Below are positions 29,800-56,320 of a stretch of DNA of 64,000 bases, piece by piece. The stretch covers positions 1 through 64,000 of IMG/VR virus record IMGVR_UViG_3300028394_002328. One strand, given 5' to 3'. A model generated the notes under the pieces. It ran no database searches and was not told the origin of the DNA. It was given only the letters and a program-made list of their open reading frames with translations. Position 1 is the stretch's first letter, and the number at the start of each line of letters is the position of its first letter. The position numbers and the translations under genes were made by a program.

Positions 29800-29808
29800 G
29801 GATAAAAA

Positions 29809-30762
29809 ATGACTTACGCACAATATGGAACGGTACAAGCATCTGATTTTAACACGCTAGTTGGTGGTAATCCCACTACAACTTCAGGAACTTTAAATGC
29901 AGTTTGGGCAACAGGTGGCACAAATGCAGGGTATGGTCAAACAGCGGTAGCCAATGTGGCAGCCGGCGGGTCCATAGCCGCATCTAGTCAATGGGCTAGT
30001 TTAGTAAGCAATACTGCGAACGCTGCCTCGCATCAAGGCACCTCTATTACTTCAGTTGCTACTCCTGTATCAGGTGGCACAATTACATATCTTTCCGCTA
30101 TCCCTACAAATTTAACAACAATTTATACTAGTAGACTAAATGCTGCAACACAAGGTTCTACTACATCAAACACTGCTACATATGGTAGTACATGGTCAAC
30201 GGCTATAACATTTACTCATACTGTTACTTTTAGTTCAGGTGACGCGGCCCGTTACTTTTTTAACGCTGGTGGTCAGTTAAAAGTTACATGTGCTCATGCG
30301 AACAATACTGCAGGTATTAACTTATTGTTAAATGATTTAGCAAGTAATGTGGGAACCGTTGCACTAAGTTCTCCAATAACAGGTTCTGTTACTATTGCAG
30401 GTACTTCATATAACGGGGTGACTAAGGTAGGTGGAGGTGGCAATGCGCCAACTATTTCTACAAATTCAGGCTATTATGCATTGGGTGTAGCTAATACTAC
30501 ATTGTTTACACAAACAGCCAGCACAGGCCCAGCTGGTTATCTAGCTACATTTATTAGAGTAATTGCTAAAACAAATGGTACTCAGGGCTCAAATGGTGAT
30601 GTAGGCAACGTCATTACTCTTTATACAATTTGGGACGAAGTTCCAGATGGTTTAACTGCTGGTACAGGTTCTGCAACTACTGTTACTATAGTACCACCCG
30701 AAAATGTTTATTTACCAACTGCTAGCTGGGGAACACCCACAGTTACTGGCACCGTAGTATAA
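29809..30762 (+). CDS. Virion structural/tail-fibre-associated protein
   Basis: T/G/A/S-rich; 'VTFSSGDAARYFFNAGG' motif; follows the tail fibre gene. Confidence 0.6.
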   Translation: MTYAQYGTVQASDFNTLVGGNPTTTSGTLNAVWATGGTNAGYGQTAVANVAAGGSIAASSQWASLVSNTANAASHQGTSITSVATPVSGGTITYLSAIPTNLTTIYTSRLNAATQGSTTSNTATYGSTWSTAITFTHTVTFSSGDAARYFFNAGGQLKVTCAHANNTAGINLLLNDLASNVGTVALSSPITGSVTIAGTSYNGVTKVGGGGNAPTISTNSGYYALGVANTTLFTQTASTGPAGYLATFIRVIAKTNGTQGSNGDVGNVITLYTIWDEVPDGLTAGTGSATTVTIVPPENVYLPTASWGTPTVTGTVV

Positions 30763-30810: not shown

Positions 30811-31116
30811 ATGGATACTAAAACACTAATTGCAGATGCTAAAGCTAGATTTAGTCATAATGCAGCCAAATCTTATTTGAAAGACAAGTATGACAGCAAA
30901 TTTATTGTTGCTGATCAAGGTGGACTTTGGCGCGCCAATTTAGAAACGATTAATTTTTTAAATTCTGTAACCGATGAAACGGTTATTTTAATTGATACAT
31001 TTAATAATCCTGTACAAGTAAATAGACAGGAATTGAAAGATAAATTGTATGCTACATACAATGATGGTATGTCTAGTTGGTATCAAGAATGGGTTGAATT
31101 AGAGAATAAACGATGA
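30811..31116 (+). CDS. Hypothetical protein (possible tail-assembly chaperone-like)
   Basis: 101-aa ORF with AGGAG RBS; ATGA overlap with the next gene. Confidence 0.55.
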   Translation: MDTKTLIADAKARFSHNAAKSYLKDKYDSKFIVADQGGLWRANLETINFLNSVTDETVILIDTFNNPVQVNRQELKDKLYATYNDGMSSWYQEWVELENKR

Positions 31117-31913
31117 GAGGTGTTCTCTTATTTGCGTTTAACAGCCCAAAATTTAATTACTATGATATGGCTGTGGCTACGGCTAAACGTGCTAATCACT
31201 TTTTAAATTTACCAGTAACATTAGTTACGGATAATGAATCATTGCCTGAGAATCCTACTTACACTTTTGATAAGGTTATAATCACCGAGCCTGACAGAAA
31301 TAATAAGCGTGATTGGGGAGTATGGATAAACAAGGGAAGATATCGTGCATATGAGTTCAGTCCTTATGATGAGACTATACTCTTAGATGCAGATTATGTT
31401 ATTAATTCTAATAAATTATTAGATACTTTTAATTTACCTACAGATTTCTGTTGCCACGATACTACAAGTTTTTTAATGAATCCTGACGCTACCCAAGAGG
31501 TATTGAGTGGATATAGTTTTAAAACTCTATGGGCTACTGTTATTACTTTTAAAAAAGATATTAGGGCCCGTCAAGTTTTTGATTGCCTTAAAATGGTTCA
31601 GGATAATTTTGACCATTACTCAAATATACATGGGTTTATCGCAAATACTTTTAGAAACGATTACGCATTGACACTAGCACTAAGAATAGTTAATGGACAT
31701 TTAGATAAAAAGGAAGATATTATACCATGGAATTTAGTACACATTGGAAAGAATACGACTATCTATCCTGATACCGATGATGAATTTAATGTAGAATACA
31801 CTGTCATGTTTGATAATTGGAAAAGAGGAAAAATTCGTAAAGAATTTATTACAATTAAAGATACTGACTTCCATGTCATGAATAAAGAAAACATGTTGGG
31901 GTTAATTAAATGA
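31113..31913 (+). CDS. GT-A fold glycosyltransferase-like protein (GT8/nucleotide-diphospho-sugar transferase-like)
   Basis: 'SPYDETILLDADY' DxD motif; 'RNDYALTLA'; 'DFHVMNK'. Confidence 0.7.
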   Translation: MRGVLLFAFNSPKFNYYDMAVATAKRANHFLNLPVTLVTDNESLPENPTYTFDKVIITEPDRNNKRDWGVWINKGRYRAYEFSPYDETILLDADYVINSNKLLDTFNLPTDFCCHDTTSFLMNPDATQEVLSGYSFKTLWATVITFKKDIRARQVFDCLKMVQDNFDHYSNIHGFIANTFRNDYALTLALRIVNGHLDKKEDIIPWNLVHIGKNTTIYPDTDDEFNVEYTVMFDNWKRGKIRKEFITIKDTDFHVMNKENMLGLIK

Positions 31914-32707
31914 GTCAAGGGTTTGTTATAATGGCACAGAATACCAGTGAAGTAGATTATGTGAAGTGTGCCGAAACATTAGCAATAAGTATTCATAAAG
32001 TAATGCCATATGCGAATGTTTCTATTGTAACCAATGATTCTGTGAATTATTCTAAATTTGATCAGGTTATCCCATTACCACATGGTGACTTAGATATAAA
32101 TGGTAAATGGAAACTAATCAATGATTGGCAAGTGTATGAAGCTAGTCCATATGATGAGACCATTAAATTAGAATCAGATATGATTATTCCCCGTAATATC
32201 ATGCATTGGTTTGATGTGTGTGGACAACAGGATATGGTTCTGTGTACTACTATTAGAAATTTAAAACAAGAAATTTCAAAAGTGCGAGGGTATCGTAGGT
32301 TCATTGATGAAAATAAATTACCTGACGTTTATAATGCTATTACCTATTTCAAAAAATCTACTACTGCTAAAACTTTTTTTGAAATTGTAAGAGATATTTT
32401 TGAAAATTGGGAAGATTATAAAAGTACGTTGAAGTGTAACCCGCAAGAGCCAGTTAGCACTGATTGGGTGTACAGCATAGCGGCACACATAATCGGTAAA
32501 GAAAAAACTACTATACCTTCATTTACTGAAATGAGTATGATACATATGAAACAATTTATAAATGGTAACCCAACTGAAAATTGGACAGATACTTTTGTAT
32601 ATGAATGCTTACCTAATCAAATAAGAATACAAACAGTGCCACAAGTTTATCCACTTCATTATCATGTTAAGAACTTTTGTGATAAAATTATGCGAGGATA
32701 TGAATGA
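31910..32707 (+). CDS. GT-A fold glycosyltransferase-like protein, paralog of the preceding gene
   Basis: 'SPYDETIKLESDM' (ExD variant); 'STDWVYSIA'; 'PLHYHVK'. Confidence 0.65.
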   Translation: MSQGFVIMAQNTSEVDYVKCAETLAISIHKVMPYANVSIVTNDSVNYSKFDQVIPLPHGDLDINGKWKLINDWQVYEASPYDETIKLESDMIIPRNIMHWFDVCGQQDMVLCTTIRNLKQEISKVRGYRRFIDENKLPDVYNAITYFKKSTTAKTFFEIVRDIFENWEDYKSTLKCNPQEPVSTDWVYSIAAHIIGKEKTTIPSFTEMSMIHMKQFINGNPTENWTDTFVYECLPNQIRIQTVPQVYPLHYHVKNFCDKIMRGYE

Positions 32708-33033
32708 GCGACGATGTAGTTATTATTTGGGAAGCACCCAAAATCATACCTCCTGAATTTCGGTTATATTACGACGAAAAGGGTAATGTTATTTGCTATA
32801 GTTGTCAACAGTTAGAAGGCAATTATATTGTAATTGATGCATTAACTTATGCTATAGCAAGACCTGATGTAAGAATCATTGATGGAAAAATTTCAACAGT
32901 AGCACCTGATGCAGTAGTATATAAATTAATGCCATCAGATGATGGTACTGCTTGTGCTTCAGAAGATATTAGCATTATTTCAGACGGGTCAATAGAAACA
33001 ACTAAGTGGAAATTAAGAATTTATGAGTTATGA
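32704..33033 (+). CDS. Hypothetical protein
   Basis: 109-aa ORF overlapping both neighbours. Confidence 0.6.
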   Translation: MSDDVVIIWEAPKIIPPEFRLYYDEKGNVICYSCQQLEGNYIVIDALTYAIARPDVRIIDGKISTVAPDAVVYKLMPSDDGTACASEDISIISDGSIETTKWKLRIYEL

Positions 33034-33973
33034 TATAGTTGATGTAGCTGATTTAGATTGCGTATATCTTAGCTATGATGAGCCACAGAAAGAAGAATTT
33101 TGGCTCAAAATTAAAAATATGATTCCATGGGCTAAAAGAGTTGACGGAGTAAAAGGTAGTGATGCAGCACATAAAGCAGCAGGCGAGGCTAGTGATACTG
33201 AAAGATTCATTCTAATCGACGGGGATAATATGCCTGATGAATCATTTTTTAATCTTCAATTAGACTTTACTGACAAAGATCCTAAATATCATCAAGCACA
33301 GTTTCGTTGGAAAGCAATTAACGCTGTCAATGGATTACGGTATGGCAATGGTGGTATGAGCAGTTGGACAAAAACTTATGTCAGGGACATGCAAACACAT
33401 GAACACCAAAAAAACGGTGATCTATCTCGTGTTGCTGATTTTTGTTTAGATAGTGCTGACAATTTGTATTGGGCTATGTATGATTGCTATAGTACTACAT
33501 ACCCTAACTATACTCCTTTCCAAGCATGGCGTGCTGGTTTCCGCGAAGGTGTTAAGATGTGCTTGAATCGGGGTGCAGTCCCAACTATAGATGAGTTTAA
33601 AGAAACAGTAGCAAGTAGAAATTTAAACAATCTTACTATATGGCACAATGTTGGTGCAGACGTTGATAATGGTATGTGGGCAATATATGGCGCAAGACTT
33701 GGTACATATATGACTATGCTAACTGCTTGGGAACATATTAATGTGCAGTGGTTTGACAACTACCCAGTACTATGGGAAGAACATAAAGATAAAGACCCAG
33801 AGCGTGAATCAACGTTACTAGGAGTTGCTCTACACGATAAACTTGGATTGCCTATGTGTACTCTAGGAAAAGAGCAAAGCAAATTTTTCAAACGTCATTA
33901 TAACGCAGATAAACATAATTTAGGTCCTTTGATTACTGAAATGGATGTGATTCGTAGAATCGAAGGATGGTGA
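33023..33973 (+). CDS. GT-A-like (glycosyltransferase-related) protein
   Basis: 'VYLSYDEP...KRVDGVKGSDAAHKAA...FILIDGDN': Rossmann-like start with a DxD motif; 'QAWRAGFREGVKM'. Confidence 0.6.
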   Translation: MSYDIVDVADLDCVYLSYDEPQKEEFWLKIKNMIPWAKRVDGVKGSDAAHKAAGEASDTERFILIDGDNMPDESFFNLQLDFTDKDPKYHQAQFRWKAINAVNGLRYGNGGMSSWTKTYVRDMQTHEHQKNGDLSRVADFCLDSADNLYWAMYDCYSTTYPNYTPFQAWRAGFREGVKMCLNRGAVPTIDEFKETVASRNLNNLTIWHNVGADVDNGMWAIYGARLGTYMTMLTAWEHINVQWFDNYPVLWEEHKDKDPERESTLLGVALHDKLGLPMCTLGKEQSKFFKRHYNADKHNLGPLITEMDVIRRIEGW

Positions 33974-35373
33974 TGAGTAACGAACAAAAACGAATAAAAG
34001 ACATTAAAATTAAAATAGAAAATGAAGTAGGTCCTACTTTTTGTCTAGCCAAATGGCATCATGTCACAATGTATCTACAATCAGGTGAAACACACAGTTG
34101 TTATCACCCTCAACCACACAAAATTCCATTAAGCGAAATAATTGATAACCCTTCAGCACTTCATAATACTAGTGAAAAAAAAGAAGAACGCAAGTTAATG
34201 TTAGATGGTGGTAAACCCAGTGGTTGCCAATATTGTTGGAACATTGAAGCAATGGGTCCTGACTATATTAGCGACAGGCATATTCGTAATGCCAGTATTT
34301 TTACTGAAGAAAGATATGAGCAGACTACCAAAGGTCTTTGGAATCAAAACATAAACCCAGAATACATTGAAATTAACTTTGGAAACGAATGTAATTTTAA
34401 ATGTGGTTACTGTCATCCAAAATATAGTACTAGTTTTTATAAAGAGATTGAAAAGTATGGTCCTGTGACCACAGTGCAAAATCATCGTTGTGATGTAGAT
34501 TGGATGAAACTTTATCAACGTGAAGATGACAATCCATATGTTGACGCATTTTGGAAATGGTGGCCCGAACTTCGCAAAACACTAACCATTATGCGTATTA
34601 CAGGTGGTGAGCCAACTCTACACAAGTCTACATGGCAATTGTTAGATTCAATTGAACAGGACCCTATGCCATGGTTAGAATTAAACATTAATAGTAACTT
34701 AGGAACCAAACCACTACTTATAGAAAGACTATCTGAAAAAGTTAAAAATCTTACTGACAGTGGTAAAATTAAAAGTTTTAAGTTGTTCACCAGCATGGAT
34801 ACTTGGGGCAAGCGAGCCGAGTATATTCGTACTGGGTTAGACTTAGAGTTATGGGAACAAAACTTTCATACCTACCTTAAAAACACTGATAGTCCTATTA
34901 CTTTTATGATTACATTTAATATCTTTAGTGTAACTACTTTTAAAAGTTTCCTTGAAAAATTTATTGAATGGCGTAAAATTTATGGTTGGTATGATGATCC
35001 GGCTAACCCACAACACCGTGTAAGATTTGATACCCCTTATCTCAGAGATCCTATTCAGTATGATATGAATATTTTACCTAAAGAAGAGTTTATGCCATAT
35101 ATGCATGAAGCATTATCTTATATGAAAGATAATACCGATGACACTAGAGCAGATGCGTTTAGTACGATTGAATATGAAAAATTCAAACGTGTAGTAGATT
35201 ATATGGCTGAAACAGCCTATTCAGAGGAAAAATTGTTACAAGGACGTAGAGACTTTTATAATTGGTTCAATGAGTTAGATGAGCGTAGAGAAACGGATAT
35301 GCTATCTATCTTCCCTGAATACTTGGGTTTCTATCGCATGTGTCAAGAAATAAATTCACTTAATCCACTATGA
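33973..35373 (+). CDS. Radical SAM enzyme with N-terminal twitch-like domain (variant, copy 1)
   Basis: CNFKCGYC motif, 'ITGGEP', N-terminal 'FCLAKW...SCYH...CQYC'. Start 33973 (TGATG overlap, GAAGGA RBS) preferred over 33967. Confidence 0.9.
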   Translation: MSNEQKRIKDIKIKIENEVGPTFCLAKWHHVTMYLQSGETHSCYHPQPHKIPLSEIIDNPSALHNTSEKKEERKLMLDGGKPSGCQYCWNIEAMGPDYISDRHIRNASIFTEERYEQTTKGLWNQNINPEYIEINFGNECNFKCGYCHPKYSTSFYKEIEKYGPVTTVQNHRCDVDWMKLYQREDDNPYVDAFWKWWPELRKTLTIMRITGGEPTLHKSTWQLLDSIEQDPMPWLELNINSNLGTKPLLIERLSEKVKNLTDSGKIKSFKLFTSMDTWGKRAEYIRTGLDLELWEQNFHTYLKNTDSPITFMITFNIFSVTTFKSFLEKFIEWRKIYGWYDDPANPQHRVRFDTPYLRDPIQYDMNILPKEEFMPYMHEALSYMKDNTDDTRADAFSTIEYEKFKRVVDYMAETAYSEEKLLQGRRDFYNWFNELDERRETDMLSIFPEYLGFYRMCQEINSLNPL

Positions 35374-36626
35374 ATAAAGAACATTTACTAAAAGAAAGCA
35401 AATCATTTTGCATGTTACCTTGGGTTCATTTCACTACTAGTCCTAGTGGTGATGCACTACCGTGTTGTATAGCAAAAACACCTATTGATGAGTTTGGATT
35501 TCATCGTCCGTTGGGTAATACTACTAGAGAAAGTATGATAGAAATTGTCAATTCTAAAGGAATGAACCAACTTAGACTTGACATGCTATCAGATGTTAAG
35601 AATCCTATGTGTTCGACCTGTCACGCACATGATGATTTATTATTGGGAAGTTTTCGTTCTAGTTCAAATAAACAATACAGTAAACATTTTGATAATGTAA
35701 TTGCTTCTACAAACGAAGATGGTTCTTTATCTGAATTTAAGATGAGATATTTTGATATTAGGTTTAGTAACATATGTAACTTTAAATGTAGAACATGTGG
35801 ACCTGACTGGAGTAGTCAATGGGAACAAGAAAACATTAAAAATAATATTTACCAACATAATATTATTAAAAATAATAAAAAAGAATTTTTAGAAGAAGTA
35901 ATCAATCAAATCCCTAATATTGAAGAAGCATACTTTGCAGGAGGTGAACCTCTTATTACAGAAGAGCACTATATTCTGTTAGAAGAAATGATTAGGCAAG
36001 GTAGAACGGACACCGTGTTAAGGTATAATACAAATCTAAGTAATTTAAAATTTAAAAACAAAGACTTAATGAGTCTTTGGAAACAGTTTACAAATAATAT
36101 ACAAATTTACGCCAGTGTAGATCATTATGGGGAACGTGCTGAATATATACGACATGGGACAGATTGGACTGTAATAGAAGAAAACTTTTTATTAGCTAAA
36201 AAATCACCATATATTCAGTTACAAATGAATACAGTGTTAAGTTTGTATAATTATAAAACTTTTTTAGAATTTTATCAGTATTTGTTTGATAAAGGGCTAT
36301 ATTCATCAACAGACAATACATATTCAATATATACTATGAGTTCACCTGAATTTCTTACTTCGAATATTTTACCACAGCACCATAAAGAAGAGGGTAAAAT
36401 TAAAATATTAAAGTTGATAGATATTATGAAGTCTATGGGATTTACAAAAAAACCCAACACTCTACATTTAGTGCAGGGCATCATTGATTGGACTATAGCA
36501 CCTAGCCAAAATACATGGGAAAAATATAAAGAAGAGTTTCAAGTTAATACTGAACAACGAGATTCTCTTAGAGGGGAAAGTTTTGTTAAAACTTTCCCAG
36601 AACTTGCTGATTTAATGGGGGATTAA
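35370..36626 (+). CDS. Radical SAM enzyme with N-terminal twitch/SPASM-like domain (copy 2)
   Basis: 'FCMLPW...PCC...CSTC', CNFKCRTC, 'FAGGEP'. Confidence 0.9.
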   Translation: MNKEHLLKESKSFCMLPWVHFTTSPSGDALPCCIAKTPIDEFGFHRPLGNTTRESMIEIVNSKGMNQLRLDMLSDVKNPMCSTCHAHDDLLLGSFRSSSNKQYSKHFDNVIASTNEDGSLSEFKMRYFDIRFSNICNFKCRTCGPDWSSQWEQENIKNNIYQHNIIKNNKKEFLEEVINQIPNIEEAYFAGGEPLITEEHYILLEEMIRQGRTDTVLRYNTNLSNLKFKNKDLMSLWKQFTNNIQIYASVDHYGERAEYIRHGTDWTVIEENFLLAKKSPYIQLQMNTVLSLYNYKTFLEFYQYLFDKGLYSSTDNTYSIYTMSSPEFLTSNILPQHHKEEGKIKILKLIDIMKSMGFTKKPNTLHLVQGIIDWTIAPSQNTWEKYKEEFQVNTEQRDSLRGESFVKTFPELADLMGD

Positions 36627-37856
36627 ATGGCACACGATACTGAATACTTATTAAAGAAAAGTGAAACATTTTGCATGTTTCCGTGGGTTCATTTTATGAC
36701 TACACCAAAAGGCGATGTATTTCCTTGTTGTGTTGGTGTAACCGAAACTCCTATGACTACCCTTACACCTAGCTCTACATTTGAAACTATTATTAATAGC
36801 GATAATTTTAAAAAATTACGCAGAGATATGTTATCAGAAACAAAAAATTCAACCTGCACTCATTGCTATAACACAGAAAAATACACTGAAGGCAGTTGGC
36901 GATCTTTTGGAAATTCTAATTTTGGTTCAAATATTGATGAGGTATTATTGAATACCAAAGAGGATGGAACTGTTAACAACTTTAAAATGAAATATTACGA
37001 TATTAGATTTAATAATATTTGTAATTTTAAGTGTAGAATGTGCGGCCCAGACTACAGCACATTGTGGGCTCAAGAAGAAAATAATAGGCTAAAACCATAT
37101 CATCAAATACCTGTTTATAATTTATCCAAAACTACAAAATTATTATCAGAATTTTTGTCACATGTTGATGATGTAGAATTTGTTTATTTTGCAGGTGGTG
37201 AACCATTAATTACTGAAGAACATTATATTATTTTAGAAGAGTTAATTAGGAAAAATAAAACTCATGTTAAAATAAGATATAATACCAACTGTAGTGTATT
37301 ATCATATAAAGATAAAAATATATTTGATTTGTGGAAGCATTTTGATCATATTGATATATCGGCAAGCATAGACCATATAGGTGAACGTGCGGAATATATT
37401 AGAACTGGTACTGATTGGGGAACAGTTGAGACCAATTTAAAAAAGTTTAATAGCACGGAAAATGTGTCATTGTCTATTAACACTGTACTCAGTATCTATA
37501 ACTATACTACATTACCTTTATTATATGAGTATTTTATTGATTTTGGAATAATTAACAATAAATCAAGTAACAGTTTAATATGTACAACAACACCTGAATA
37601 TTTTGCTTCTACGGTATTGCCTAAAATACTAAAAGAACGGGCTTTGCCAAATATTCTGAAGTTGGTTGAGAAAATGACAACCTTAAATTCGGGATACTTA
37701 ATTGAACCGGCTATTAATTTTACACATTCAAGCAATGATTGGGAAGCACAAAAAGAAAACTTTTTGAAAGAAACATTAATGCGAGATGAACTTAGAAACG
37801 ACTCTTTTGAAAAAACTTTTCCTGAATTGATTACTATGATAGACGGTTCTATATGA
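36627..37856 (+). CDS. Radical SAM enzyme with N-terminal twitch/SPASM-like domain (copy 3)
   Basis: 'FCMFPW...PCC...CTHC', CNFKCRMC, 'FAGGEP'. Confidence 0.9.
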   Translation: MAHDTEYLLKKSETFCMFPWVHFMTTPKGDVFPCCVGVTETPMTTLTPSSTFETIINSDNFKKLRRDMLSETKNSTCTHCYNTEKYTEGSWRSFGNSNFGSNIDEVLLNTKEDGTVNNFKMKYYDIRFNNICNFKCRMCGPDYSTLWAQEENNRLKPYHQIPVYNLSKTTKLLSEFLSHVDDVEFVYFAGGEPLITEEHYIILEELIRKNKTHVKIRYNTNCSVLSYKDKNIFDLWKHFDHIDISASIDHIGERAEYIRTGTDWGTVETNLKKFNSTENVSLSINTVLSIYNYTTLPLLYEYFIDFGIINNKSSNSLICTTTPEYFASTVLPKILKERALPNILKLVEKMTTLNSGYLIEPAINFTHSSNDWEAQKENFLKETLMRDELRNDSFEKTFPELITMIDGSI

Positions 37857-39085
37857 TTATGGACAAAAATTATTTACTAAATGAAAGTAAAGTGTTTTGT
37901 ATGTTTCCGTGGATGCATTTAAATGTTACTCCTAAGGGAGATATATATCCTTGTTGTAGTAATGACTACACAGTCCCGTTTGGTAATACAAAGCAATCTA
38001 CTCTAAAAGATGCATTCAATAGCAGTCAAATGAAGCAATTACGACTAGACATGTTGGCTGACAAACCAAACAAGATATGTAACTTTTGCTATAAACATGA
38101 AGAAGCAGGGCCGCATAGTTTCAGAAACTATAGTAAAGAACAGTTTGGTAAGCATTTTGATGAGATTATACCCACTACCCTTGAAGATGGTACTGTTCCT
38201 GAATTCAAAATGCATTACTTTGATATTAGGTTTAGTAATATATGTAATTTCAAATGCAGAACATGTGGAAGTGAATTTAGTAGCCAATGGGGAGCAGAAA
38301 TGCGAGCCAATCATGATCCTAAACATCCCATAGTTATTCATGCTGATGAGAAAGGCAATTTACTGCGTGAAGTATTGGATCAGGTAGAACATATTGACTT
38401 GGCATATTTTGCAGGTGGCGAGCCTACTCTGACTGAAGAACACTATATTATGCTGGAGGAAATGATTCGCAAAAAGCGTACGGATATTACACTTAGGTAT
38501 AATACTAATGCTAGTAATATTAAGTTCAAAGACTATGATTTGTTAGACATGTGGAAACACTTTAAAAAGATTGAACTAAGTTGTAGCATAGATCATTATG
38601 GAGAACGAGCAGAATGGTTACGCCATGGCACTGATTGGGGTCTAGTTGAAAGTAACTTATTAAAATTTAGAGAATTAGATTATATTTCATTCCAATTGAA
38701 CACTGTTTTTTCATTGTTTAACTACTTGACTATTGGAGAATTCTACTCATACCTAAAAAGTAAAGGATTGGTTCGTACTCATGATTGGTATCATAGTTTA
38801 TACTTAGCAGTGCATCCTAGTCACTATAGTGGTAAGAGTTTGCCCAAAGAATTAAAAATTGAGGCTGCAAATAAAGCATTGGCTTGGGCAAATCAACACC
38901 ATGATGATGGGACATCGTTATCACGTTTAGTAACGGATTCAGTTAACTTTGCAAAAGATTCTGATACTTGGGCTGCTAATAAAGAAACGTTTATGATGCA
39001 CACTGGATCAGGGGATAAGATACGAGGCGAAAATTTTTGGAAAACATTCCCTGAATTAAATAAACTACAAGATTTGACGGAGTAA
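37853..39085 (+). CDS. Radical SAM enzyme with N-terminal twitch/SPASM-like domain (copy 4)
   Basis: 'FCMFPW...PCC...CNFC', CNFKCRTC, 'FAGGEP'. Confidence 0.9.
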   Translation: MIMDKNYLLNESKVFCMFPWMHLNVTPKGDIYPCCSNDYTVPFGNTKQSTLKDAFNSSQMKQLRLDMLADKPNKICNFCYKHEEAGPHSFRNYSKEQFGKHFDEIIPTTLEDGTVPEFKMHYFDIRFSNICNFKCRTCGSEFSSQWGAEMRANHDPKHPIVIHADEKGNLLREVLDQVEHIDLAYFAGGEPTLTEEHYIMLEEMIRKKRTDITLRYNTNASNIKFKDYDLLDMWKHFKKIELSCSIDHYGERAEWLRHGTDWGLVESNLLKFRELDYISFQLNTVFSLFNYLTIGEFYSYLKSKGLVRTHDWYHSLYLAVHPSHYSGKSLPKELKIEAANKALAWANQHHDDGTSLSRLVTDSVNFAKDSDTWAANKETFMMHTGSGDKIRGENFWKTFPELNKLQDLTE

Positions 39086-39087
39086 AA

Positions 39088-40365
39088 ATGCAAAACCCAC
39101 TAGTAATAGAAAATTTAGTTAAGTTTGGCAAACACTTTTGTGTATTACCTTGGGTGCATTTTCATTCATGGCCAGACGGTAAAGTAATGCCTTGCTGTGT
39201 TGCTGACAGTGATATGCCAGTTGCAAACATTAATAATGGCGAATCTATTATTCAGATGATGAATAGTGATGACTATAAAAAAATGCGTGAAGCAATGTTA
39301 GTTGATGAACCTGTTGAAGCATGTAGAAGATGCTATGATTTAGAATTATTAGGCACGTGGACTATGCGTAAAAGTCATAATAAGCGCAGAGGTCTTGAAT
39401 ATGTTGACATGATTGCAAAGACTACCGATAATGATGGAACTATTTCTGAATTTCAAATGAAGTATATGGATTTGCGTTTCAGTAATATGTGCAACATGAA
39501 ATGTCGCAGTTGCGGTCCAGGGTGTAGTAGTCTTTGGGCACAAGAATATATTGAAGAAAAAGGCTCGGTTGAATATGAAAAGCATTTTAAAACTAAAAAG
39601 ATAGTAGTCAATACCGCAGAAGAAATGAGTTTTATGAATAAATTAAAACCATATCTCGCGGATGTATTAGAAGTTTATTTCGCAGGTGGAGAAATTATTA
39701 TTACTCCTGAACACTATGAGTGTTTAGATTATTGGGTTGAGAATGGGTTGACTGATCAGGTTGAATTAACTTACACAACCAATTTTAGTGCTATGAAATA
39801 TAAAGATAAAGACTTACTTGGTTATTGGAAGAAGTTCCCGCAATTAAAAATTTGGGCTAGCCTAGATGCTCACGGAGACGTAGCGGAAGTTATACGCAAG
39901 GGCACAGATTGGGAAAGAATTGTAAAAAACATTAGAACATTAAAAGAACAAGTACCTCATGCACAATTTCAAATCACACCAACCCTTAGTATTTGGAATA
40001 TATTTGATTTTCCTGATTTTTTTGATTATCTGATTAAAGAAAATCTAATAGATGATAAGACAACTAGCCCTAGATTTAATCTAGCAACTAACCCATGGTA
40101 CGCAAACATTATGATATTGCCTGTGTCTGTTAAACACAGATTGATAGAACTGTACCGTGTGTATGCAGATAGATATGAAAATGTGAACATTGAACTACAC
40201 AATGGCTTTAAAATGATAATTTATAATCTAAGTGTAGGTGAAGAAAACAAGGGTGGCATTTTAGAGTTTAAAAAGTTCAATGATGAATTAGATCAATTTA
40301 GAAATGAAAAGATAGAAGATATTATTCCTGAACTCAAAGAGATTTATCAGTGGGCCGAAAGTTAA
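39088..40365 (+). CDS. Radical SAM enzyme with N-terminal twitch/SPASM-like domain (copy 5)
   Basis: 'FCVLPW...PCC...CRRC', CNMKCRSC, 'FAGGEI'. Confidence 0.9.
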   Translation: MQNPLVIENLVKFGKHFCVLPWVHFHSWPDGKVMPCCVADSDMPVANINNGESIIQMMNSDDYKKMREAMLVDEPVEACRRCYDLELLGTWTMRKSHNKRRGLEYVDMIAKTTDNDGTISEFQMKYMDLRFSNMCNMKCRSCGPGCSSLWAQEYIEEKGSVEYEKHFKTKKIVVNTAEEMSFMNKLKPYLADVLEVYFAGGEIIITPEHYECLDYWVENGLTDQVELTYTTNFSAMKYKDKDLLGYWKKFPQLKIWASLDAHGDVAEVIRKGTDWERIVKNIRTLKEQVPHAQFQITPTLSIWNIFDFPDFFDYLIKENLIDDKTTSPRFNLATNPWYANIMILPVSVKHRLIELYRVYADRYENVNIELHNGFKMIIYNLSVGEENKGGILEFKKFNDELDQFRNEKIEDIIPELKEIYQWAES

Positions 40366-41327
40366 TCGCTATAGAGGCTCCCCAGCCTTACTTGGCCGTT
40401 ACTTGGCAAGTTAATAACTATTGTAACTTTAGGTGTAGTTATTGTAACCCGGGCAATTGGGGAGGCACTGACATCAATGATGGCAATCTAGACTTATACA
40501 TCAACAATCTAGATATTATCATTAATCGTTATAGAGAGATAGGTTATAAGAATTTTAAATTTTTCTTTAGTGGTGGTGAGCCCACTGCTTGGCGTAACTT
40601 TATTCCAATATGTGAATGGTTGTACAAAGAACTACCCCATGCTACATTAGCAGTCAATACTAATTTAAGTCGCCCGTTAAAATGGTGGGAGAAAAATCAT
40701 TATTTATTTGATGATGTAGTTGCTAGTTTTCATGTAGAGTTTGCTGATAAAAAACGGTATGAAGAAAATAGTATATTCTTATGCGATAAGGTAAACTATT
40801 TGGCTACTAAGATGTTACTACATGAGGAAAGATTTTGGGAAGTAGTAGAGTTTGGTAAGCATTTGAAAACTGTAATGCCAAACTACTTCTTAGAATGGAC
40901 TCCGCTATTTGATGAAATGACAGTCAATGCTGGCCCTTGGGAATACAAAGATCCTGCAAAAACTCAGTTCATTAATGATTGTACATCAGAGCATCAACAA
41001 ATCAAGCCAAAGCCTGATAAAAGATCAAACTACAATGTTAGTTATAATAGATATGATGATAATCATACAGAAGTGTGTAACAGTAATGAGGTAATTGTTG
41101 CAGGTAATAATTACTTCAGTAGTTGGCGCTGCAATGTAGGTGATGCTATCTTTATCAATCCAGTGGGCGAGATTAGTTTAGCAAGTTGTGGTATGGGTGG
41201 CAATGCGGGTCATATATTAAAGGATATTTCTCGTGTTGGACCTAAACAAATCATTTGCAAAAAAGAACATTGCCACTGTGGCACAGATATTATAATCCCT
41301 AAATTTATAAACAATGGCAATCCTTAA
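40350..41327 (+). CDS. Radical SAM enzyme with C-terminal Cys-rich (SPASM/twitch-like) domain
   Basis: N-terminal CNFRCSYC, 'FSGGEP', C-terminal 'WRCNVG...SCG...ICKKEHCHC'. Confidence 0.88.
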   Translation: MGRKLIAIEAPQPYLAVTWQVNNYCNFRCSYCNPGNWGGTDINDGNLDLYINNLDIIINRYREIGYKNFKFFFSGGEPTAWRNFIPICEWLYKELPHATLAVNTNLSRPLKWWEKNHYLFDDVVASFHVEFADKKRYEENSIFLCDKVNYLATKMLLHEERFWEVVEFGKHLKTVMPNYFLEWTPLFDEMTVNAGPWEYKDPAKTQFINDCTSEHQQIKPKPDKRSNYNVSYNRYDDNHTEVCNSNEVIVAGNNYFSSWRCNVGDAIFINPVGEISLASCGMGGNAGHILKDISRVGPKQIICKKEHCHCGTDIIIPKFINNGNP

Positions 41328-42543
41328 TAGAGACTCTTATCCTAAGATTAATACTAGTTTTGAAAAAGTAGGTACACCGCATTGGACAGCACCTGTTAAC
41401 AAGACTGTTACAGAAGGAAATGTAACTTTTCAAGTATATTACTTTGATGAAAATAAAGATTATTGGTTCATTGACATATATAACGGAAATGCATTTGAAT
41501 GTTACCCTATAGAAACTATTCTTCCTGAAGAAATATTAAGAAAAGTTTACAATAAGGAAGTAATATTATTAATTTCAAATACTCATGAAACTTATCACAG
41601 TTGTATTACTGGAATATATAGAGATTTGGTAGTTAGGGCTAATATCCCTATAGAGCAGATAATATTTCTAACCGAGTCTGCTGATATAATAGAAGAAGTA
41701 GACATTGTAAGACAAAAATATAATTTAGAACGAATCAATGTTGAATGGATAAGAACATTTGAGTTCAACGCAAAAAGTCAATTTTTACATATGTTTACTA
41801 ATCCACCGTTGACGCTAGAAAATAAACAGTATGATAAAAAGTTTTTAAGTTTTAATCGGCATATGATGACTCATGGTAGATTGCACCGCGGAGGACTTAT
41901 AGCATTGCTATGCTCAATGAATTTATTAGACAAGGGGTTTGTCAGCGCAGGGATGTTTTATGAATACCCAACTTGGAATGACATTTTAACCGAGTTAAAA
42001 AGTTACCATCGTGACAATGAAGAGTTCATTCAATTATTAACGACTAATGAACAACGAATTTTAAATATCGGTGATCTCTCTGTAGATGTAGATAGCACAA
42101 TGTTAAAAGAACGAGACAATGCTTATCTCTTACCTTCTATTTCTAAATTTTATGCGGATTCTTACTTTAGTGTAGTAACCGAAACAAACTGTTTTGCTAA
42201 AGGAATAATGCAGGGTGATATAACTCCACCTGGCAGACTCCTAAGTGAAAAAACTTTTAAAACTATTGCGGTTAAGCATCCATTTATTATAGTAGCCAAA
42301 GCCAAAACACTTGAATTGCTTAGAGAGATAGGATATAGAACATTTAGTCCATGGATAGACGAAAGTTATGACAATGAATTAAATGAATCAACTAGAATGT
42401 TGATGATAGTTAAAGAAATAAAAAGATTATGTGAACTATCTCCTAATCAATTAACTGATTTTTTAAACAATGTTAGAGAGATTTGCGAGCACAACCATCA
42501 AATATTATTGAGTAAAAATAAATGGACAACACAGCTAAATTAA
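41314..42543 (+). CDS. Putative glycosyltransferase (GT10-like C-terminal domain), copy A
   Basis: 'KKFLSFNR...HR', 'SYFSVVTET...SEKTFK...HPFI...GYRTF...DESYD' recalls the GT10 'EN...Y.TEK...P' motif. Confidence 0.55.
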   Translation: MAILNRDSYPKINTSFEKVGTPHWTAPVNKTVTEGNVTFQVYYFDENKDYWFIDIYNGNAFECYPIETILPEEILRKVYNKEVILLISNTHETYHSCITGIYRDLVVRANIPIEQIIFLTESADIIEEVDIVRQKYNLERINVEWIRTFEFNAKSQFLHMFTNPPLTLENKQYDKKFLSFNRHMMTHGRLHRGGLIALLCSMNLLDKGFVSAGMFYEYPTWNDILTELKSYHRDNEEFIQLLTTNEQRILNIGDLSVDVDSTMLKERDNAYLLPSISKFYADSYFSVVTETNCFAKGIMQGDITPPGRLLSEKTFKTIAVKHPFIIVAKAKTLELLREIGYRTFSPWIDESYDNELNESTRMLMIVKEIKRLCELSPNQLTDFLNNVREICEHNHQILLSKNKWTTQLN

Positions 42544-43172
42544 AATATGATATAATATATTTTGTAGGTGACAGTGTAACATTTGCGGTGAATCAAGGGG
42601 ATGACCTATATAGAACAGTCAATGAACAAAATAGATTTAGTACATTAATTGGTAATTATTATAATTTACCTGTTATTAATAATGCTCTTCCCGGCTGTTC
42701 AAATGAGTATATATTAAGAACCGTATATACTGATATAAGGGAGTTTCGACGTAATGGGATTAACCCATTAGTATTTTGCAGTTATACCGACATAAATAGG
42801 AAAGAATTTTTCTGTGAAGGAGTCAAAAAGCAGGTTTCAACTATTGATGATGGTAACCGAGTTTTTGATTCAGAATTTGTTAAAGAATATTTTACAAAGC
42901 ATTTCAATTGGGCGTTTGCACATCATGTGTCATGTATTCAAGTAGACGCTTGCAAAACATTATTTAAATACCTAAAAATTGATTTTATTGATGTATTTTC
43001 TAATGTAATTCTTGATTATGATTTTGTTACTTCTCGTGAGTGCTTAGGTAGTATTAATAAATTTGTTGGTCCAACTAACATGTTTAATGGTTGTGGTCAT
43101 TTAACTGTTAATGGTAACAAAGTAGTTGCTGATTGGGCTATTGCTAAATTCAATGAACTATATTTTAAATGA
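42522..43172 (+). CDS. SGNH/GDSL hydrolase-like protein
   Basis: 'FVGDSVT', 'PGCSNEYI' and C-terminal 'GHLTVNGN' blocks. Confidence 0.65.
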   Translation: MDNTAKLKYDIIYFVGDSVTFAVNQGDDLYRTVNEQNRFSTLIGNYYNLPVINNALPGCSNEYILRTVYTDIREFRRNGINPLVFCSYTDINRKEFFCEGVKKQVSTIDDGNRVFDSEFVKEYFTKHFNWAFAHHVSCIQVDACKTLFKYLKIDFIDVFSNVILDYDFVTSRECLGSINKFVGPTNMFNGCGHLTVNGNKVVADWAIAKFNELYFK

Positions 43173-43891
43173 AAACACTTTATGTATGTGGTGATAGTTT
43201 TTTAACACCCAGTGCATTATATCCCAACACGCATTTTACAGAAATTATTTCAAAAAAATTAGGGTATGATTTAAAAGTATTGGCTCATGGGGGAATGAGT
43301 AATAACGGAATATGTCTTCAAATTGAAGCAGCAATTGCTAATAATGCATCATTTGTAATAGCATCTCCTACCTATTACGATAGAACTGAAATTCCAATAA
43401 TAGACAAATTAACAAATTATAATGCTACCGATTTATTTTATTATGGTAATACTTACAGTAATTATGATAATAAAGTTGATCATTCTCTATTTTCTGACTC
43501 AATTAATTCACTATTATCTGCCGATAATAAGGAAAGGTTTAAAAAAATACCAAATATGATAGAAAAAGTTAACACATTGAAAGATTATCTAGTTAATTTA
43601 TATAATATAAATTGGAAGCAGCAACAAGATATATGGGCTTTATATGCAACATTTCATAAATTGCATATGTCTAATATACCCTATATCATGGTATTAGACA
43701 GAATGAATATCGCATCAGAATTTAATTGGTTAACTGAAAAAAATAATACTTTACCATATGGTGATATTGCACACTTAGTTAACGATGGTACTATTAAAGT
43801 AGATCCTGGGTATCATACATTTCCCGAGGATCAACTTTATATAGCAGATAAAATTTTAGAACATATTGAAAAATTTAATATATTAAATTAA
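43169..43891 (+). CDS. SGNH/GDSL hydrolase-like protein
   Basis: 'VCGDSF', 'GGMSNNGI' and C-terminal 'DPGYHT'. Confidence 0.65.
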   Translation: MKTLYVCGDSFLTPSALYPNTHFTEIISKKLGYDLKVLAHGGMSNNGICLQIEAAIANNASFVIASPTYYDRTEIPIIDKLTNYNATDLFYYGNTYSNYDNKVDHSLFSDSINSLLSADNKERFKKIPNMIEKVNTLKDYLVNLYNINWKQQQDIWALYATFHKLHMSNIPYIMVLDRMNIASEFNWLTEKNNTLPYGDIAHLVNDGTIKVDPGYHTFPEDQLYIADKILEHIEKFNILN

Positions 43892-44238
43892 CCATACTTC
43901 TTCATTTCTCTTACTGGGTCATTTAGTTTTTCTGCCATACTATTTTTTAAATCGTACCGTTTATGCATTACATCTCTGACATGCAATGCTCTACGACCCA
44001 CTTCTGCTAAATCGTATAAATGTTCAATACGGAATTTTTTAAAATCATCTTCTAAATCCCACACTTCCGCGTGTACTTCATATAATTGATCAAGTTCGTC
44101 CTTTATTAGTTCAAAATCAATGTCATGTAATTGTTCAGTGTAGAAGTCTAGTTCTTCTTTATTATTGCCTAATTTTGCAAATTTTAATTTGGCAATGCAA
44201 TAACGGTCTACTAATTCAATAACGGGAAATTTATACAT
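43888..44238 (-). CDS. Hypothetical helical protein (DUF6165/DUF4254-like)
   Basis: 'ELVDR.CI..LK...LYEVH..VWDLED...R...KN...E.K.Y' pattern; last gene of the inverted cassette. Confidence 0.55.
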   Translation of the reverse strand: MYKFPVIELVDRYCIAKLKFAKLGNNKEELDFYTEQLHDIDFELIKDELDQLYEVHAEVWDLEDDFKKFRIEHLYDLAEVGRRALHVRDVMHKRYDLKNSMAEKLNDPVREMKKYG

Positions 44239-48336: not shown

Positions 48337-48350
48337 ACTTAGGAATATTA

Positions 48351-56221: not shown

Positions 56222-56320
56222 ATGTTTATATTTAAATGGATTAAGAATATTATCCGAGAATACAAATACCGTAAAAGAATTAAAGAATTACGCAAACGGG
56301 ATCCTTTCATATACAAATGA
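56222..56320 (+). CDS. Small basic peptide (32 aa) coupled to the carbamoyltransferase
   Basis: Translated by hand: MFIFKWIKNIIREYKYRKRIKELRKRDPFIYK*. AAGGAG RBS at 56209-56214; ATGA overlap with 56317. Confidence 0.75.
   Translation: MFIFKWIKNIIREYKYRKRIKELRKRDPFIYK

What the first reader, a model, noticed from the sequence alone, without database searches (positions are those of the whole stretch)
33973..41327. Six consecutive radical SAM genes, five with an inverted (N-terminal twitch) architecture
Seen: five paralogs share an N-terminal C-x2-(P/K)W...C...CxxC domain before CxxxCxxC, plus '(R/V)AE.(I/L)R.G.D' and a C-terminal 'D..R.......(F/I)PE' motif; the sixth has the conventional order. 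Known: twitch/SPASM domains are normally C-terminal (BtrN, anSME, RiPP maturases). From memory, an N-terminal-twitch family of unknown function is described mainly from uncultured genomes. Inference: the context gives that family a functional hypothesis (BtrN-like sugar oxidation/epimerisation, or protein modification), with paralogs acting on different positions or as a hetero-oligomer.
Basis: partly seen in the sequence, partly recalled or inferred. Interest (0 to 1): 0.8.

Follow-up and report, generated by a model that had tools for sequence, protein, structure and literature searches.

The report
Phage radical-SAM array in sugar island
An uncultured freshwater jumbo phage carries six back-to-back radical SAM enzyme genes, five from a catalogued but uncharacterised family, and their conserved neighbours and gene fusions suggest they chemically edit sugars made by a phage glycosylation island next to its tail-fibre genes.

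Summary
There are six contiguous, overlapping + strand genes (33967-41327). R1-R5 are full-length members of NCBIfam NF033640, "twitch domain-containing radical SAM protein" (314-365 bits, cutoff 170). R6 is a different rSAM with a C-terminal twitch-like Cys motif.

The five are not equivalent. R1 belongs to an old subfamily B. R5 is an A-type whose closest cellular relatives sit in a Bdellovibrionota cassette that also holds R1-like, R6-like and B12-rSAM genes. R2-R4 are virus-only duplicates.

Such arrays are the rule for this family. Of 80 viral loci, 76 have at least 2 copies, in ordered patterns (BA, BAAA, BBADC). About 21 of 150 family representatives are tandem fusions.

The function is unproven, but association points to sugar chemistry:
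- A GT2-like 316-aa protein is in 71/80 viral loci and is fused to an N_Twi unit in one protein.
- A Pfam-significant GT2 is fused in another.
- GT-A proteins are in 58-62/80 viral loci.
- The window adds a C-methyltransferase, epimerase, UDP-Glc dehydrogenase, B12-rSAM and carbamoyltransferase.
- The island encodes no predicted membrane protein.

No characterised enzyme is close by sequence or fold. Verdict: a clear member of a known, uncharacterised family, with a testable glycan-tailoring hypothesis.

The parts
33967..35373 (+). R1: N_Twi radical SAM, subfamily B (468 aa)
   Evidence: NF033640 at 314 bits, residues 23-453. Cys 26, 45, 87, 90, then CNFKCGYC at residue 142. It falls in a deep clade shared with Bdellovibrionota array members (100*).
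35370..36626 (+). R2: N_Twi radical SAM, subfamily A, virus-only duplicate
   Evidence: NF033640 at 357 bits. Pfam SPASM at 14-85 plus Radical_SAM. It lies in an 18-row virus-only clade (100*).
36627..37856 (+). R3: N_Twi radical SAM, subfamily A, fast-evolving duplicate
   Evidence: NF033640 at 362 bits. Only 84% identical to its counterpart in the near-identical genome L092, where R2, R4 and R5 are 96-99%.
37853..39085 (+). R4: N_Twi radical SAM, subfamily A
   Evidence: NF033640 at 365 bits. AF2 model pLDDT 92.6. Kept in all close relatives, including the 3-copy arrays.
39088..40365 (+). R5: N_Twi radical SAM, subfamily A, second old lineage
   Evidence: NF033640 at 362 bits. It lies in a 15-row clade (99*) that includes Halobacteriovorax and Bacteriovoracaceae cassette genes.
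40350..41327 (+). R6: radical SAM with a C-terminal twitch-like Cys motif (conventional order)
   Evidence: Only Radical_SAM is detected, below cutoff. Conserved C-terminal Cys in alignment A4. The model aligns full-length with BlsE, SkfB and BtrN. Orthologues sit beside N_Twi genes in 8 bacterial loci and in 27 of 80 viral loci.
33023..33973 (+). 316-aa GT2-like (GT-A, DxD) protein, the closest partner of the array
   Evidence: Present in 71/80 viral loci. Fused to an N_Twi unit in P0135, E 1e-25. Invariant D66 and D68. Weak GT2-family Pfam hits in 6 member matches. The Atlas structural neighbour is labelled 'Glycosyltransferase 2-like'.
31113..32707 (+). Two paralogous ~265-aa GT-A nucleotide-diphospho-sugar transferases (31113-31913, 31910-32707)
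   Evidence: Atlas score 0.96 and TM 0.62-0.77 to clusters carrying Nucleotid_trans/GT8. Present in 58-62/80 viral loci.
28573..30762 (+). Two virion or fibre-like proteins (408 aa and 317 aa, 22-28% Ser+Thr) that head the conserved module
   Evidence: PHROG virion structural protein hits. A relative has a weak Peptidase_G2 hit. Present in 39-41/80 viral loci within 10 kb of the array. Ser+Thr content.
41314..42543 (+). 409-aa protein with a virus-specific domain also found in 46382-47524, 54479-56200 and the C-terminal part of 48333-50705
   Evidence: The four cluster together. Present in ~60/80 viral loci. In other phages the domain is fused to epimerase/dehydratase or MTS methyltransferase modules, and a GT10-like resemblance is only a weak lead. 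No Pfam or PDB sequence match.
42522..43891 (+). Two small proteins with N-terminal GDS motifs (possible SGNH/GDSL acyl-esterases or transferases)
   Evidence: Motif seen in the translations only. No significant family hit. Pfam-supported GDSL genes recur in bacterial N_Twi loci.
44231..46337 (-). Sugar C-methyltransferase (44231-45439) and NDP-sugar epimerase/reductase (45432-46337)
   Evidence: Pfam Methyltransf_13/14/23. Heptose-epimerase/GalE-type hits. The same C-methyltransferase architecture sits next to an N_Twi-TPR fusion in a bacterial genome.
48333..50705 (+). UDP-glucose/GDP-mannose dehydrogenase fused to the 409-type domain
   Evidence: Pfam UDPG_MGDP_dh_N and central domain. PHROG 9148.
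50709..52958 (+). B12-binding radical SAM (class B type), a seventh rSAM of the island
   Evidence: Pfam B12-binding plus Radical_SAM. Homologues lie in the Halobacteriovorax cassette and other N_Twi loci.
56317..57798 (+). Carbamoyltransferase (NodU/CmcH type)
   Evidence: Pfam Carbam_trans_N and Carbam_trans_C. Also present in 20 distant viral loci and in the Fluviicola-type bacterial locus.

Best explanation
R1-R5 are radical SAM enzymes that tailor a sugar or glycan, working with GT-A-type glycosyltransferases in a fully soluble, phage-encoded glycosylation island that follows the tail-fibre genes.

What is shown: each protein has an intact SAM-cleaving [4Fe-4S] motif and GGE motif, plus an N-terminal twitch domain with four Cys that would hold a second [4Fe-4S] cluster.

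Inferred mechanism: reductive cleavage of SAM gives the 5'-deoxyadenosyl radical, which abstracts a hydrogen from a sugar carbon. The twitch cluster then takes or returns an electron, as in BtrN or anSME. The outcome would be oxidation to a keto-sugar, epimerisation, or dehydration/decarboxylation.

The functional core is a B-type plus A-type pair (R1 with R4 or R5), probably a physical complex. R2 and R3 are recent A-type duplicates that widen the range of positions or sugars. R6 (C-terminal twitch) and the B12-rSAM add further steps.

Because the island encodes no membrane protein and sits in the fibre-gene block, the product most likely decorates virion fibre proteins in the cytoplasm. This last step is the least certain.
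For: - Family membership and intact motifs.
- High-confidence model with a separate N-terminal domain and a C-terminal helical domain.
- Fusions: GT2 + N_Twi in P0265. Two independent assemblies hold the full-length fusion. 316-aa GT2-like + N_Twi in P0135.
- Co-occurrence in 80 viral loci: 316-aa protein in 71, GT-A 265-aa proteins in 58-62, 409-type domain in ~60, virion proteins in 39-41.
- The window island also has a C-methyltransferase, epimerase, UDP-Glc dehydrogenase, B12-rSAM, DegT piece and carbamoyltransferase.
- Bacterial contexts hold GT2, GT4, NTP_transferase, an epimerase/C-methyltransferase fusion, RmlD, GDSL, carbamoyltransferase and a UbiA-GT fusion.
- GT2 occurs in 16 of 59 bacterial loci, and this is an undercount, since L042 was scored negative yet has GT4/GT1 genes and a carbamoyltransferase within 10 kb.
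- Complex formation: ~21/150 representatives are tandem fusions, and the arrays have an ordered grammar BA, BAAA, BBADC.
- Cytoplasmic target: no TM segment in any island protein, and the neighbouring virion proteins are 22-28% Ser+Thr.
- A published description of a comparable 'host recognition cluster' with fibres, GT8 genes and rSAM cassettes in pelagimyophages (PMC7029224).
Against: - No member of the family has a known substrate. The argument is guilt by association.
- The best bacterial analogue of the R5/R6/R1/B12 set (Halobacteriovorax, L089) and the 8-copy Bacteriovoracaceae array (L091) have no recognisable glycosyltransferase within 10 kb.
- TPR and Sel1 fusions suit protein substrates as well.
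- ABC exporters in 17/59 loci fit either glycan or peptide export.
- Fold matches do not favour sugar-acting rSAMs over peptide-acting ones.
- The GT assignment of the 316-aa protein rests on weak hits (best E 0.03), and the 409-type domain is unassigned.
- No RNA run was listed, so expression is unshown.
- Virion glycosylation has not been shown for any relative.
Confidence: 0.5

Rival explanations
1. Same sugar chemistry, different destination. The island makes unusual nucleotide sugars that the host's own membrane machinery builds into O-antigen or capsule. This would change the infected cell's surface, for superinfection exclusion or to stop released virions being trapped.
For: This is the reading given for glycosyltransferase-rich host recognition clusters of pelagimyophages (PMC7029224). 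The GT-A proteins resemble GT8/Nucleotid_trans families that often act in LPS synthesis. In Vibrio phage K566 an LPS galactosyltransferase-like gene sits beside four N_Twi genes. Bacterial homologues lie in surface-polysaccharide-type clusters.
Against: The island encodes no flippase, polymerase, ligase or any membrane protein. The genes lie in one strand block with the fibre and virion genes rather than with early genes. The phage looks like a lytic jumbo myovirus, for which late surface conversion gives little obvious gain.
Confidence: 0.22
2. The N_Twi enzymes act directly on proteins or peptides. Candidates are the Ser/Thr-rich fibre proteins or a secreted repeat protein, with reactions like those of anSME (Ser/Cys oxidation), peptide epimerases or cross-linking RiPP maturases. 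On this reading the glycosyltransferases are a parallel activity.
For: The top fold matches include anSME (Z 12.5), CteB, SkfB, SuiB and EpeE. N_Twi units are fused to TPR and Sel1 repeats, which usually bind proteins. TPR proteins and a secreted Cys-rich Sel1-like ORF occur in bacterial arrays. ABC exporters are present in 17/59 loci. Arrays without any GT exist.
Against: Pfam found no RRE/PqqD-like domain, and the C-terminal domain is all-helical. No conserved short precursor ORF was seen next to the arrays. The giant ORF and the fibre proteins have almost no Cys. The two enzyme fusions found are to glycosyltransferases.
Confidence: 0.15
3. The enzymes act on something else altogether, such as a lipid or polyprenyl carrier, a cofactor or DNA. 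Alternatively, several copies are redundant or decaying duplicates.
For: There are weak hits to tetraether lipid synthase and GDGT-MAS. A UbiA-GT-GDSL fusion and Lnb/Lgt lipoprotein genes lie near some arrays. R3 evolves faster than its neighbours. R2 and R3 are dispensable in relatives.
Against: All six keep every cluster and SAM-binding motif. Scores against MoaA, PqqE, NirJ, QueE and viperin models are far below cutoff. The array sits away from nucleotide-metabolism genes. The ordered multi-subfamily arrays are conserved across distant phages.
Confidence: 0.06

Closest known systems
NCBIfam NF033640, N_Twi_rSAM (twitch domain-containing radical SAM protein)
   Same: R1-R5 match the whole model at 314-365 bits against a cutoff of 170. 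They share the domain order of an N-terminal twitch followed by the rSAM core and a helical tail. AlphaFold DB relatives at TM 0.9 carry the same automatic names.
   Different: The family has no assigned function. R1 is a divergent B-type member, and R6 is not a member (26 bits).
BtrN, SpeY and BlsE: twitch-domain rSAM enzymes acting on (amino)sugars
   Same: They have a rSAM core plus one auxiliary four-Cys cluster and a sugar-pathway context. R6 aligns with BlsE (Z 14.4) and BtrN (Z 12.1) over full length. R4's core matches BlsE at Z 12.2.
   Different: In R1-R5 the twitch is N-terminal and is not covered by any PDB alignment. Sequence identity is 10-20%. No NCBIfam equivalog score approaches its cutoff, and the BlsE model gives 16 bits against a cutoff of 400. 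The match is no better than to peptide-acting enzymes.
anSME, CteB, SkfB and SuiB: SPASM/twitch rSAM enzymes acting on peptides
   Same: These are the best core fold matches (anSME Z 12.5, CteB 11.7). They share the auxiliary-cluster logic.
   Different: Their auxiliary domain is C-terminal and often holds two clusters. RiPP maturases carry an RRE domain, and none was found here. No precursor gene was seen.
Host recognition cluster of pelagimyophages and cyanomyophages (PMC7029224), and the T4-like marine viral genome with 12 rSAM genes (PMC5332604)
   Same: A giant protein, tail-fibre genes, GT8-type glycosyltransferases, sugar-nucleotide enzymes and radical SAM cassettes lie together in one variable block.
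   Different: This window is from a freshwater jumbo myovirus. Its baseplate wedge protein is closest (31-33% identity) to Rak2, Atu_ph07 and Phosso-type phages, not to T4-like cyanophages or pelagiphages. Those papers did not identify the rSAM family, its subfamily grammar or its fusions.

Membership tests
NF033640 N_Twi_rSAM | Whole-protein HMM score at or above the curated cutoff (170 bits), with end-to-end coverage | tested here: met
   R1 314, R2 357, R3 362, R4 365 and R5 362 bits, covering model positions 1-398. R6 scores 26 bits and is not a member.
NF033640 N_Twi_rSAM | Twitch/SPASM-type Cys domain located N-terminal to the CX3CX2C motif | tested here: met
   Pfam SPASM at residues ~14-85 of R2-R5 (E 1e-7 to 1e-12), before Radical_SAM. 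R1 has the four aligned Cys, although Pfam's SPASM model does not reach it.
Radical SAM superfamily | CX3CX2C cluster motif and GGE SAM-binding motif | tested here: met
   Present in all six proteins. Actual Fe-S binding and SAM cleavage cannot be tested with these tools.
Twitch subclass (BtrN type) | One auxiliary [4Fe-4S] cluster ligated by four Cys of a domain C-terminal to the core | tested here: not met
   R1-R5 have four conserved Cys, but in an N-terminal domain. R6 alone fits the C-terminal arrangement.
BtrN, BlsE or DesII type sugar rSAM equivalogs | Equivalog-level sequence match | tested here: not met
   The only hit is BlsE TIGR04466 at 16 bits against a cutoff of 400 (R3). No BtrN or DesII model hit at E<=0.01.
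RiPP rSAM/SPASM maturases | RRE (PqqD-like) peptide-binding domain | tested here: not met
   No PqqD/RRE Pfam hit in R1-R6. The model's extra domains are the N-terminal twitch and an all-helical C-terminal tail.
RiPP rSAM/SPASM maturases | Adjacent short precursor-peptide gene | tested here: inconclusive
   No conserved short ORF was seen beside the arrays in the window or in the annotated loci. No systematic small-ORF search was run.
MoaA, PqqE, NirJ, QueE (cofactor biosynthesis) | Equivalog HMM score above cutoff | tested here: not met
   MoaA scores at most 31 bits against 284, PqqE 15 against 381, QueE at most 26 against 260, and NirJ does not appear for the window proteins.
Viperin family | Equivalog HMM score above cutoff | tested here: not met
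   The prokaryotic viperin model scores 22-36 bits against a cutoff of 180. The similarity is at the fold level of the core only.

The most novel reading that the evidence does not exclude
N_Twi radical SAM arrays are a new class of multi-enzyme 'glycan editors'. Hetero-oligomers of B-type and A-type subunits, docked to a GT2-like transferase, would perform several different radical reactions (such as epimerisation, oxidation or deoxygenation) on sugars attached to phage tail-fibre proteins. Rapid duplication and divergence of A-type copies (R2-R4) would diversify the virion's sugar coat, and so its host range or its resistance to host or predator recognition.
Probability: 0.2. Interest if true: 0.85.

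Novelty: new member of a known kind. Interest (0 to 1): 0.6.

Why it matters
The family is very large: 17,111 representatives at 50% identity with E<=1e-3, and 5,088 at E<=1e-30. It is abundant in aquatic phages and predatory bacteria, yet it has no known substrate.

This analysis turns an annotation label into a concrete, testable proposal. The enzymes come as ordered sets of distinct subfamilies, are often fused to each other, and are tied to GT-A glycosyltransferases by gene order and by gene fusion.

If they do edit sugars on virion proteins, that would add radical chemistry to phage glycobiology. It would also explain why many large aquatic phages carry up to a dozen Fe-S enzymes.

If they instead act on proteins, the same gene sets define a new maturase system. 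Either result would assign a function to thousands of genes.

Tried and rejected
- Near-identical DNA search in deposited phages found nothing. Protein search found only ~22% relatives in Vibrio phages K566/K567, Ralstonia phage RsoM2USA and one marine virus record.
- Literature searches for 'N-terminal twitch' and 'N-terminal SPASM', and for rSAM with jumbo phage and glycosyltransferase, returned nothing. The phrase 'twitch domain-containing radical SAM' occurs only in general SPASM/twitch papers.
- Profile searches of R1-R5, the 316-aa family and the 409-type family against PDB sequences gave only weak or chance hits.
- Pfam, NCBIfam and PHROGs gave nothing for most neighbours.
- Fold searches could not separate sugar-acting from peptide-acting relatives. 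AlphaFold DB relatives are all unnamed.
- The exact-sequence look-up for the Paenibacillus homologue failed, because my start codon guess was wrong.
- No RNA run was listed.
- Laying contigs showed presence at 99-100% identity in several freshwater samples. The joints between paralogs have short flanks and may come from cross-matching of paralogs or from related phages, so I draw nothing from them.
- I considered the giant 6344-aa protein as a repeat or peptide substrate. It has only weak internal repeats and 0.3% Cys, and nothing ties it specifically to the rSAMs.
- I rejected 'in-situ duplication of one gene' as the origin of the whole array.


Full report
**What is there.** The window comes from an uncultured freshwater jumbo myovirus.
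- PHROG hits identify a baseplate hub and wedge proteins at 1-8.7 kb.
- The wedge protein is 31-33% identical to those of Rak2, Atu_ph07 and Phosso-type jumbo phages.
- No deposited phage is close at the DNA level.
- The same stretch occurs at 99-100% identity in contigs of several independent freshwater metagenomes.
- A 200,570-bp IMG/VR contig (L092) is nearly identical.

After a 6344-aa ORF and two virion-type proteins comes a block of about 27 kb of sugar-related genes, nearly all on the + strand. The six radical SAM genes of the finding lie inside it.

**The observation.** It is confirmed. Six ORFs run from 33967 to 41327, with junctions of -16 to +2 nt.
- R1-R5 match NCBIfam NF033640 (N_Twi_rSAM) over the full model at 314-365 bits, against a cutoff of 170.
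- Pfam finds a SPASM-type domain at residues ~14-85 of R2-R5, ahead of the Radical_SAM domain.
- All six have CX3CX2C and GGE motifs, and R1-R5 have four aligned N-terminal Cys.
- R6 is a different rSAM. It has only the core by HMM, but a conserved C-terminal four-Cys pattern.
- The R6 model (pLDDT 86) aligns almost end to end with the twitch enzymes BlsE, SkfB and BtrN. The 'conventional order' is therefore supported.

**The five are not one kind.**
- Pairwise identities: R2-R4 are 44-47% identical to each other, R5 is 30-38% identical to them, and R1 is 23-25%.
- In a FastTree of 102 family members and an IQ-TREE of 68, R1 falls in a deep subfamily (here called B) shared with genes in Bdellovibrionota arrays.
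- R5 falls in an A-type clade (99*) that includes genes of Halobacteriovorax and Bacteriovoracaceae cassettes.
- R2, R3 and R4 lie in an 18-row virus-only clade (100*).
- The Halobacteriovorax cassette holds, in order, an R5-like gene, an R6-like gene, a short N-SPASM rSAM, an SGNH-like ORF, an R1-like gene and a B12-rSAM like window 50709-52958.

The array is therefore a collected set of old, distinct enzymes (R1, R5, R6) plus a lineage-specific expansion (R2-R4). Close relatives carry 3, 4 or 5 N_Twi copies and always keep R1, R4 and R5. In L003 and L004 the R2/R3 position is filled with small ORFs, and HNH genes sit nearby.

**Arrays are the norm for this family.**
- A profile of R1-R5 finds 17,111 representatives (5,088 at E<=1e-30) in a 50%-clustered library.
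- Among 80 IMG/VR loci, 76 have at least 2 copies within 10 kb. The mode is 4-6 and the maximum is 7.
- Clustering 467 sequences gives subfamilies A, B, C and D.
- Viral arrays follow ordered patterns: BA (15 loci), BAAA (12), BAA (7) and BBADC with variants (about 17). The window is BAAAA.
- In bacterial genomes, arrays reach 8 copies (L016/L091).
- About 21 of the 150 best representatives are single polypeptides with two or three N_Twi units.

A fixed order of different subfamilies, together with frequent fusion, argues that the paralogs have non-redundant roles and probably work as a complex.

**What they work with.** In viral loci the most constant neighbours are:
- the 316-aa protein just upstream of R1 (71/80 loci);
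- the 265-aa pair (58-62/80);
- a virus-specific domain shared by four window proteins (~60/80);
- the two virion proteins (39-41/80).

The 265-aa proteins are GT-A nucleotide-diphospho-sugar transferases by language-model and structure neighbours (score 0.96, TM 0.62-0.77 to clusters carrying Nucleotid_trans/GT8).

The 316-aa family has an invariant DxD. It also gives weak but repeated GT2-family hits, and its structural neighbour is labelled GT2-like.

Two fusions link the enzyme classes directly. P0265 is a Pfam-significant GT2 joined to an N_Twi unit. Two independent assemblies hold the full-length fusion. P0135 is a 316-type domain joined to an N_Twi unit.

The window island further encodes the following:
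- a sugar C-methyltransferase;
- an NDP-sugar epimerase;
- a UDP-glucose dehydrogenase fusion;
- a B12-rSAM;
- a DegT-type piece;
- a carbamoyltransferase.

Annotated bacterial contexts show these:
- GT2 and GT4 glycosyltransferases;
- a sugar nucleotidyltransferase followed by ten rSAM genes;
- an epimerase/C-methyltransferase fusion;
- RmlD and GDSL genes;
- a carbamoyltransferase;
- a UbiA-GT-GDSL fusion;
- PhyH dioxygenases and TPR proteins.

My own seed-based census found a glyco-family gene in 21 of 59 bacterial loci, with GT2 in 16. That is an undercount, since L042 was scored negative yet has GT4/GT1 genes and a carbamoyltransferase within 10 kb.

**What speaks against a simple sugar story.**
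- The Halobacteriovorax cassette and the 8-gene Bacteriovoracaceae array have no recognisable glycosyltransferase within 10 kb.
- N_Twi units are also fused to TPR and Sel1 repeats.
- ABC exporters occur in 17 of 59 loci.
- The R4 model (pLDDT 92.6) matches solved structures only through its core, residues ~118-373. anSME, BlsE, CteB, MoaA, DesII and viperin all score Z 10.8-12.5.
- Full-length structural relatives in AlphaFold DB are all uncharacterised.

The chemistry cannot be read from similarity.

**Most likely working.**
- *Shown:* six intact rSAM genes, five with an N-terminal auxiliary-cluster domain, embedded in a soluble sugar-tailoring island. They are tied to GT-A-type transferases by order, co-occurrence and fusion.
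- *Inferred:* each enzyme abstracts a hydrogen from a sugar carbon with the 5'-deoxyadenosyl radical and uses the twitch cluster for electron transfer. This would give oxidation, epimerisation or a related rearrangement. A B-type/A-type pair is the working unit, and the extra A copies extend specificity.
- *Least certain:* the destination. No island protein has a predicted membrane segment, the block is contiguous with the fibre genes, and the adjacent virion proteins are 22-28% Ser+Thr. I therefore favour glycans on virion proteins over remodelling of the host surface, which is the reading offered for similar clusters in pelagimyophages.

I put about 0.7 on a sugar or glycan substrate of some kind. 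I put about 0.5 on the full statement.

**Comparison with the known.**
- R1-R5 are members of NF033640. They are not members of any characterised equivalog.
- They may work like BtrN, SpeY or BlsE-type twitch enzymes, but they fail the defining C-terminal placement and all equivalog scores.
- They lack the RRE domain of RiPP maturases.
- Two papers noticed many rSAM genes in large marine phages without identifying the family or proposing a role (PMC5332604; PMC7029224).

**Novelty and interest.** The genes are new members of a known, uncharacterised family. I found the following described nowhere:
- the subfamily grammar of the arrays;
- the mixed origin of this array;
- the conserved viral module (fibre proteins, GT-A pair, GT2-like protein, N_Twi array, R6);
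- the glycosyltransferase fusions.

Together these make a long-standing 'unknown function' directly testable. Interest is 0.6.

Noticed in passing
window 57810-64000 (runs off the end): A further giant ORF of at least 2,063 aa with five W-x-P-x-P-x2-PP motifs (residues 125, 192, 391, 939, 1283). It shows no similarity to the island proteins or to the 316-aa family.
   Followed up: partly
window 8717-27751: A 6344-aa ORF between the baseplate wedge gene and the virion/fibre genes. It is rich in Thr, Asn and Ser, has 0.3% Cys and only weak internal repeats. It is comparable in position to the giant VrlC gene of pelagimyophage host recognition clusters.
   Followed up: partly
window 36627-37856 (R3) vs L092:8775: R3 is only 84% identical to its counterpart in an otherwise near-identical genome, while R2, R4 and R5 are 96-99%. 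The R3 region is among the lowest in GC in the window (0.30). It may be a local hot spot of divergence or of recombination among paralogs.
   Followed up: partly
L003 3600-9941, and L004: In a 363-kb relative, the R2/R3 position is occupied by about nine small ORFs, and two HNH endonuclease genes flank the 316-aa gene. Homing elements may drive the turnover of the array.
   Followed up: no
L021, L044, L022, L032, L006: Contigs syntenic with this phage module are filed in MAG bins: Haliscomenobacter EUL_031 (183-kb and 148-kb contigs), Verrucomicrobia TMED56, Betaproteobacteria TMED41, and a Flavobacteriaceae bin at 74% identity. This is either misbinning or a host hint.
   Followed up: partly
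window 52942-53526: The DegT/DnrJ-type aminotransferase ORF is only 194 aa and matches Pfam positions 165-240 of 360. It overlaps the end of the B12-rSAM gene and the start of the next ORF, so it may be a truncated or split gene.
   Followed up: no
L091 6055-18051: A Bacteriovoracaceae genome has eight N_Twi genes directly beside the ribosomal protein L21/L27 and Obg genes. A 110-aa secreted, Cys-rich, Sel1-like ORF lies inside the array, and no glycosyltransferase is nearby.
   Followed up: partly
window 41314-42543, 46382-47524, 48333-50705 (C-terminal part), 54479-56200: Four window proteins share a virus-specific domain with no Pfam or PDB sequence match. In other phages it is fused to epimerase/dehydratase or methyltransferase modules. 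Its consensus contains a 'TEKTFK' stretch, and a GT10-like resemblance is only a weak lead.
   Followed up: partly
P0169, P0237, P0239, P0242, P0245, P0268, P0269: Seven family representatives share an unassigned N-terminal extension of about 110-160 aa in front of the twitch domain.
   Followed up: no
L001 (Vibrio phage K566) 12001-18737: A cultured 255-kb Vibrio phage carries four divergent N_Twi genes next to an LPS galactosyltransferase-like gene and a PagP-like gene. It is a possible experimental model for the family.
   Followed up: partly
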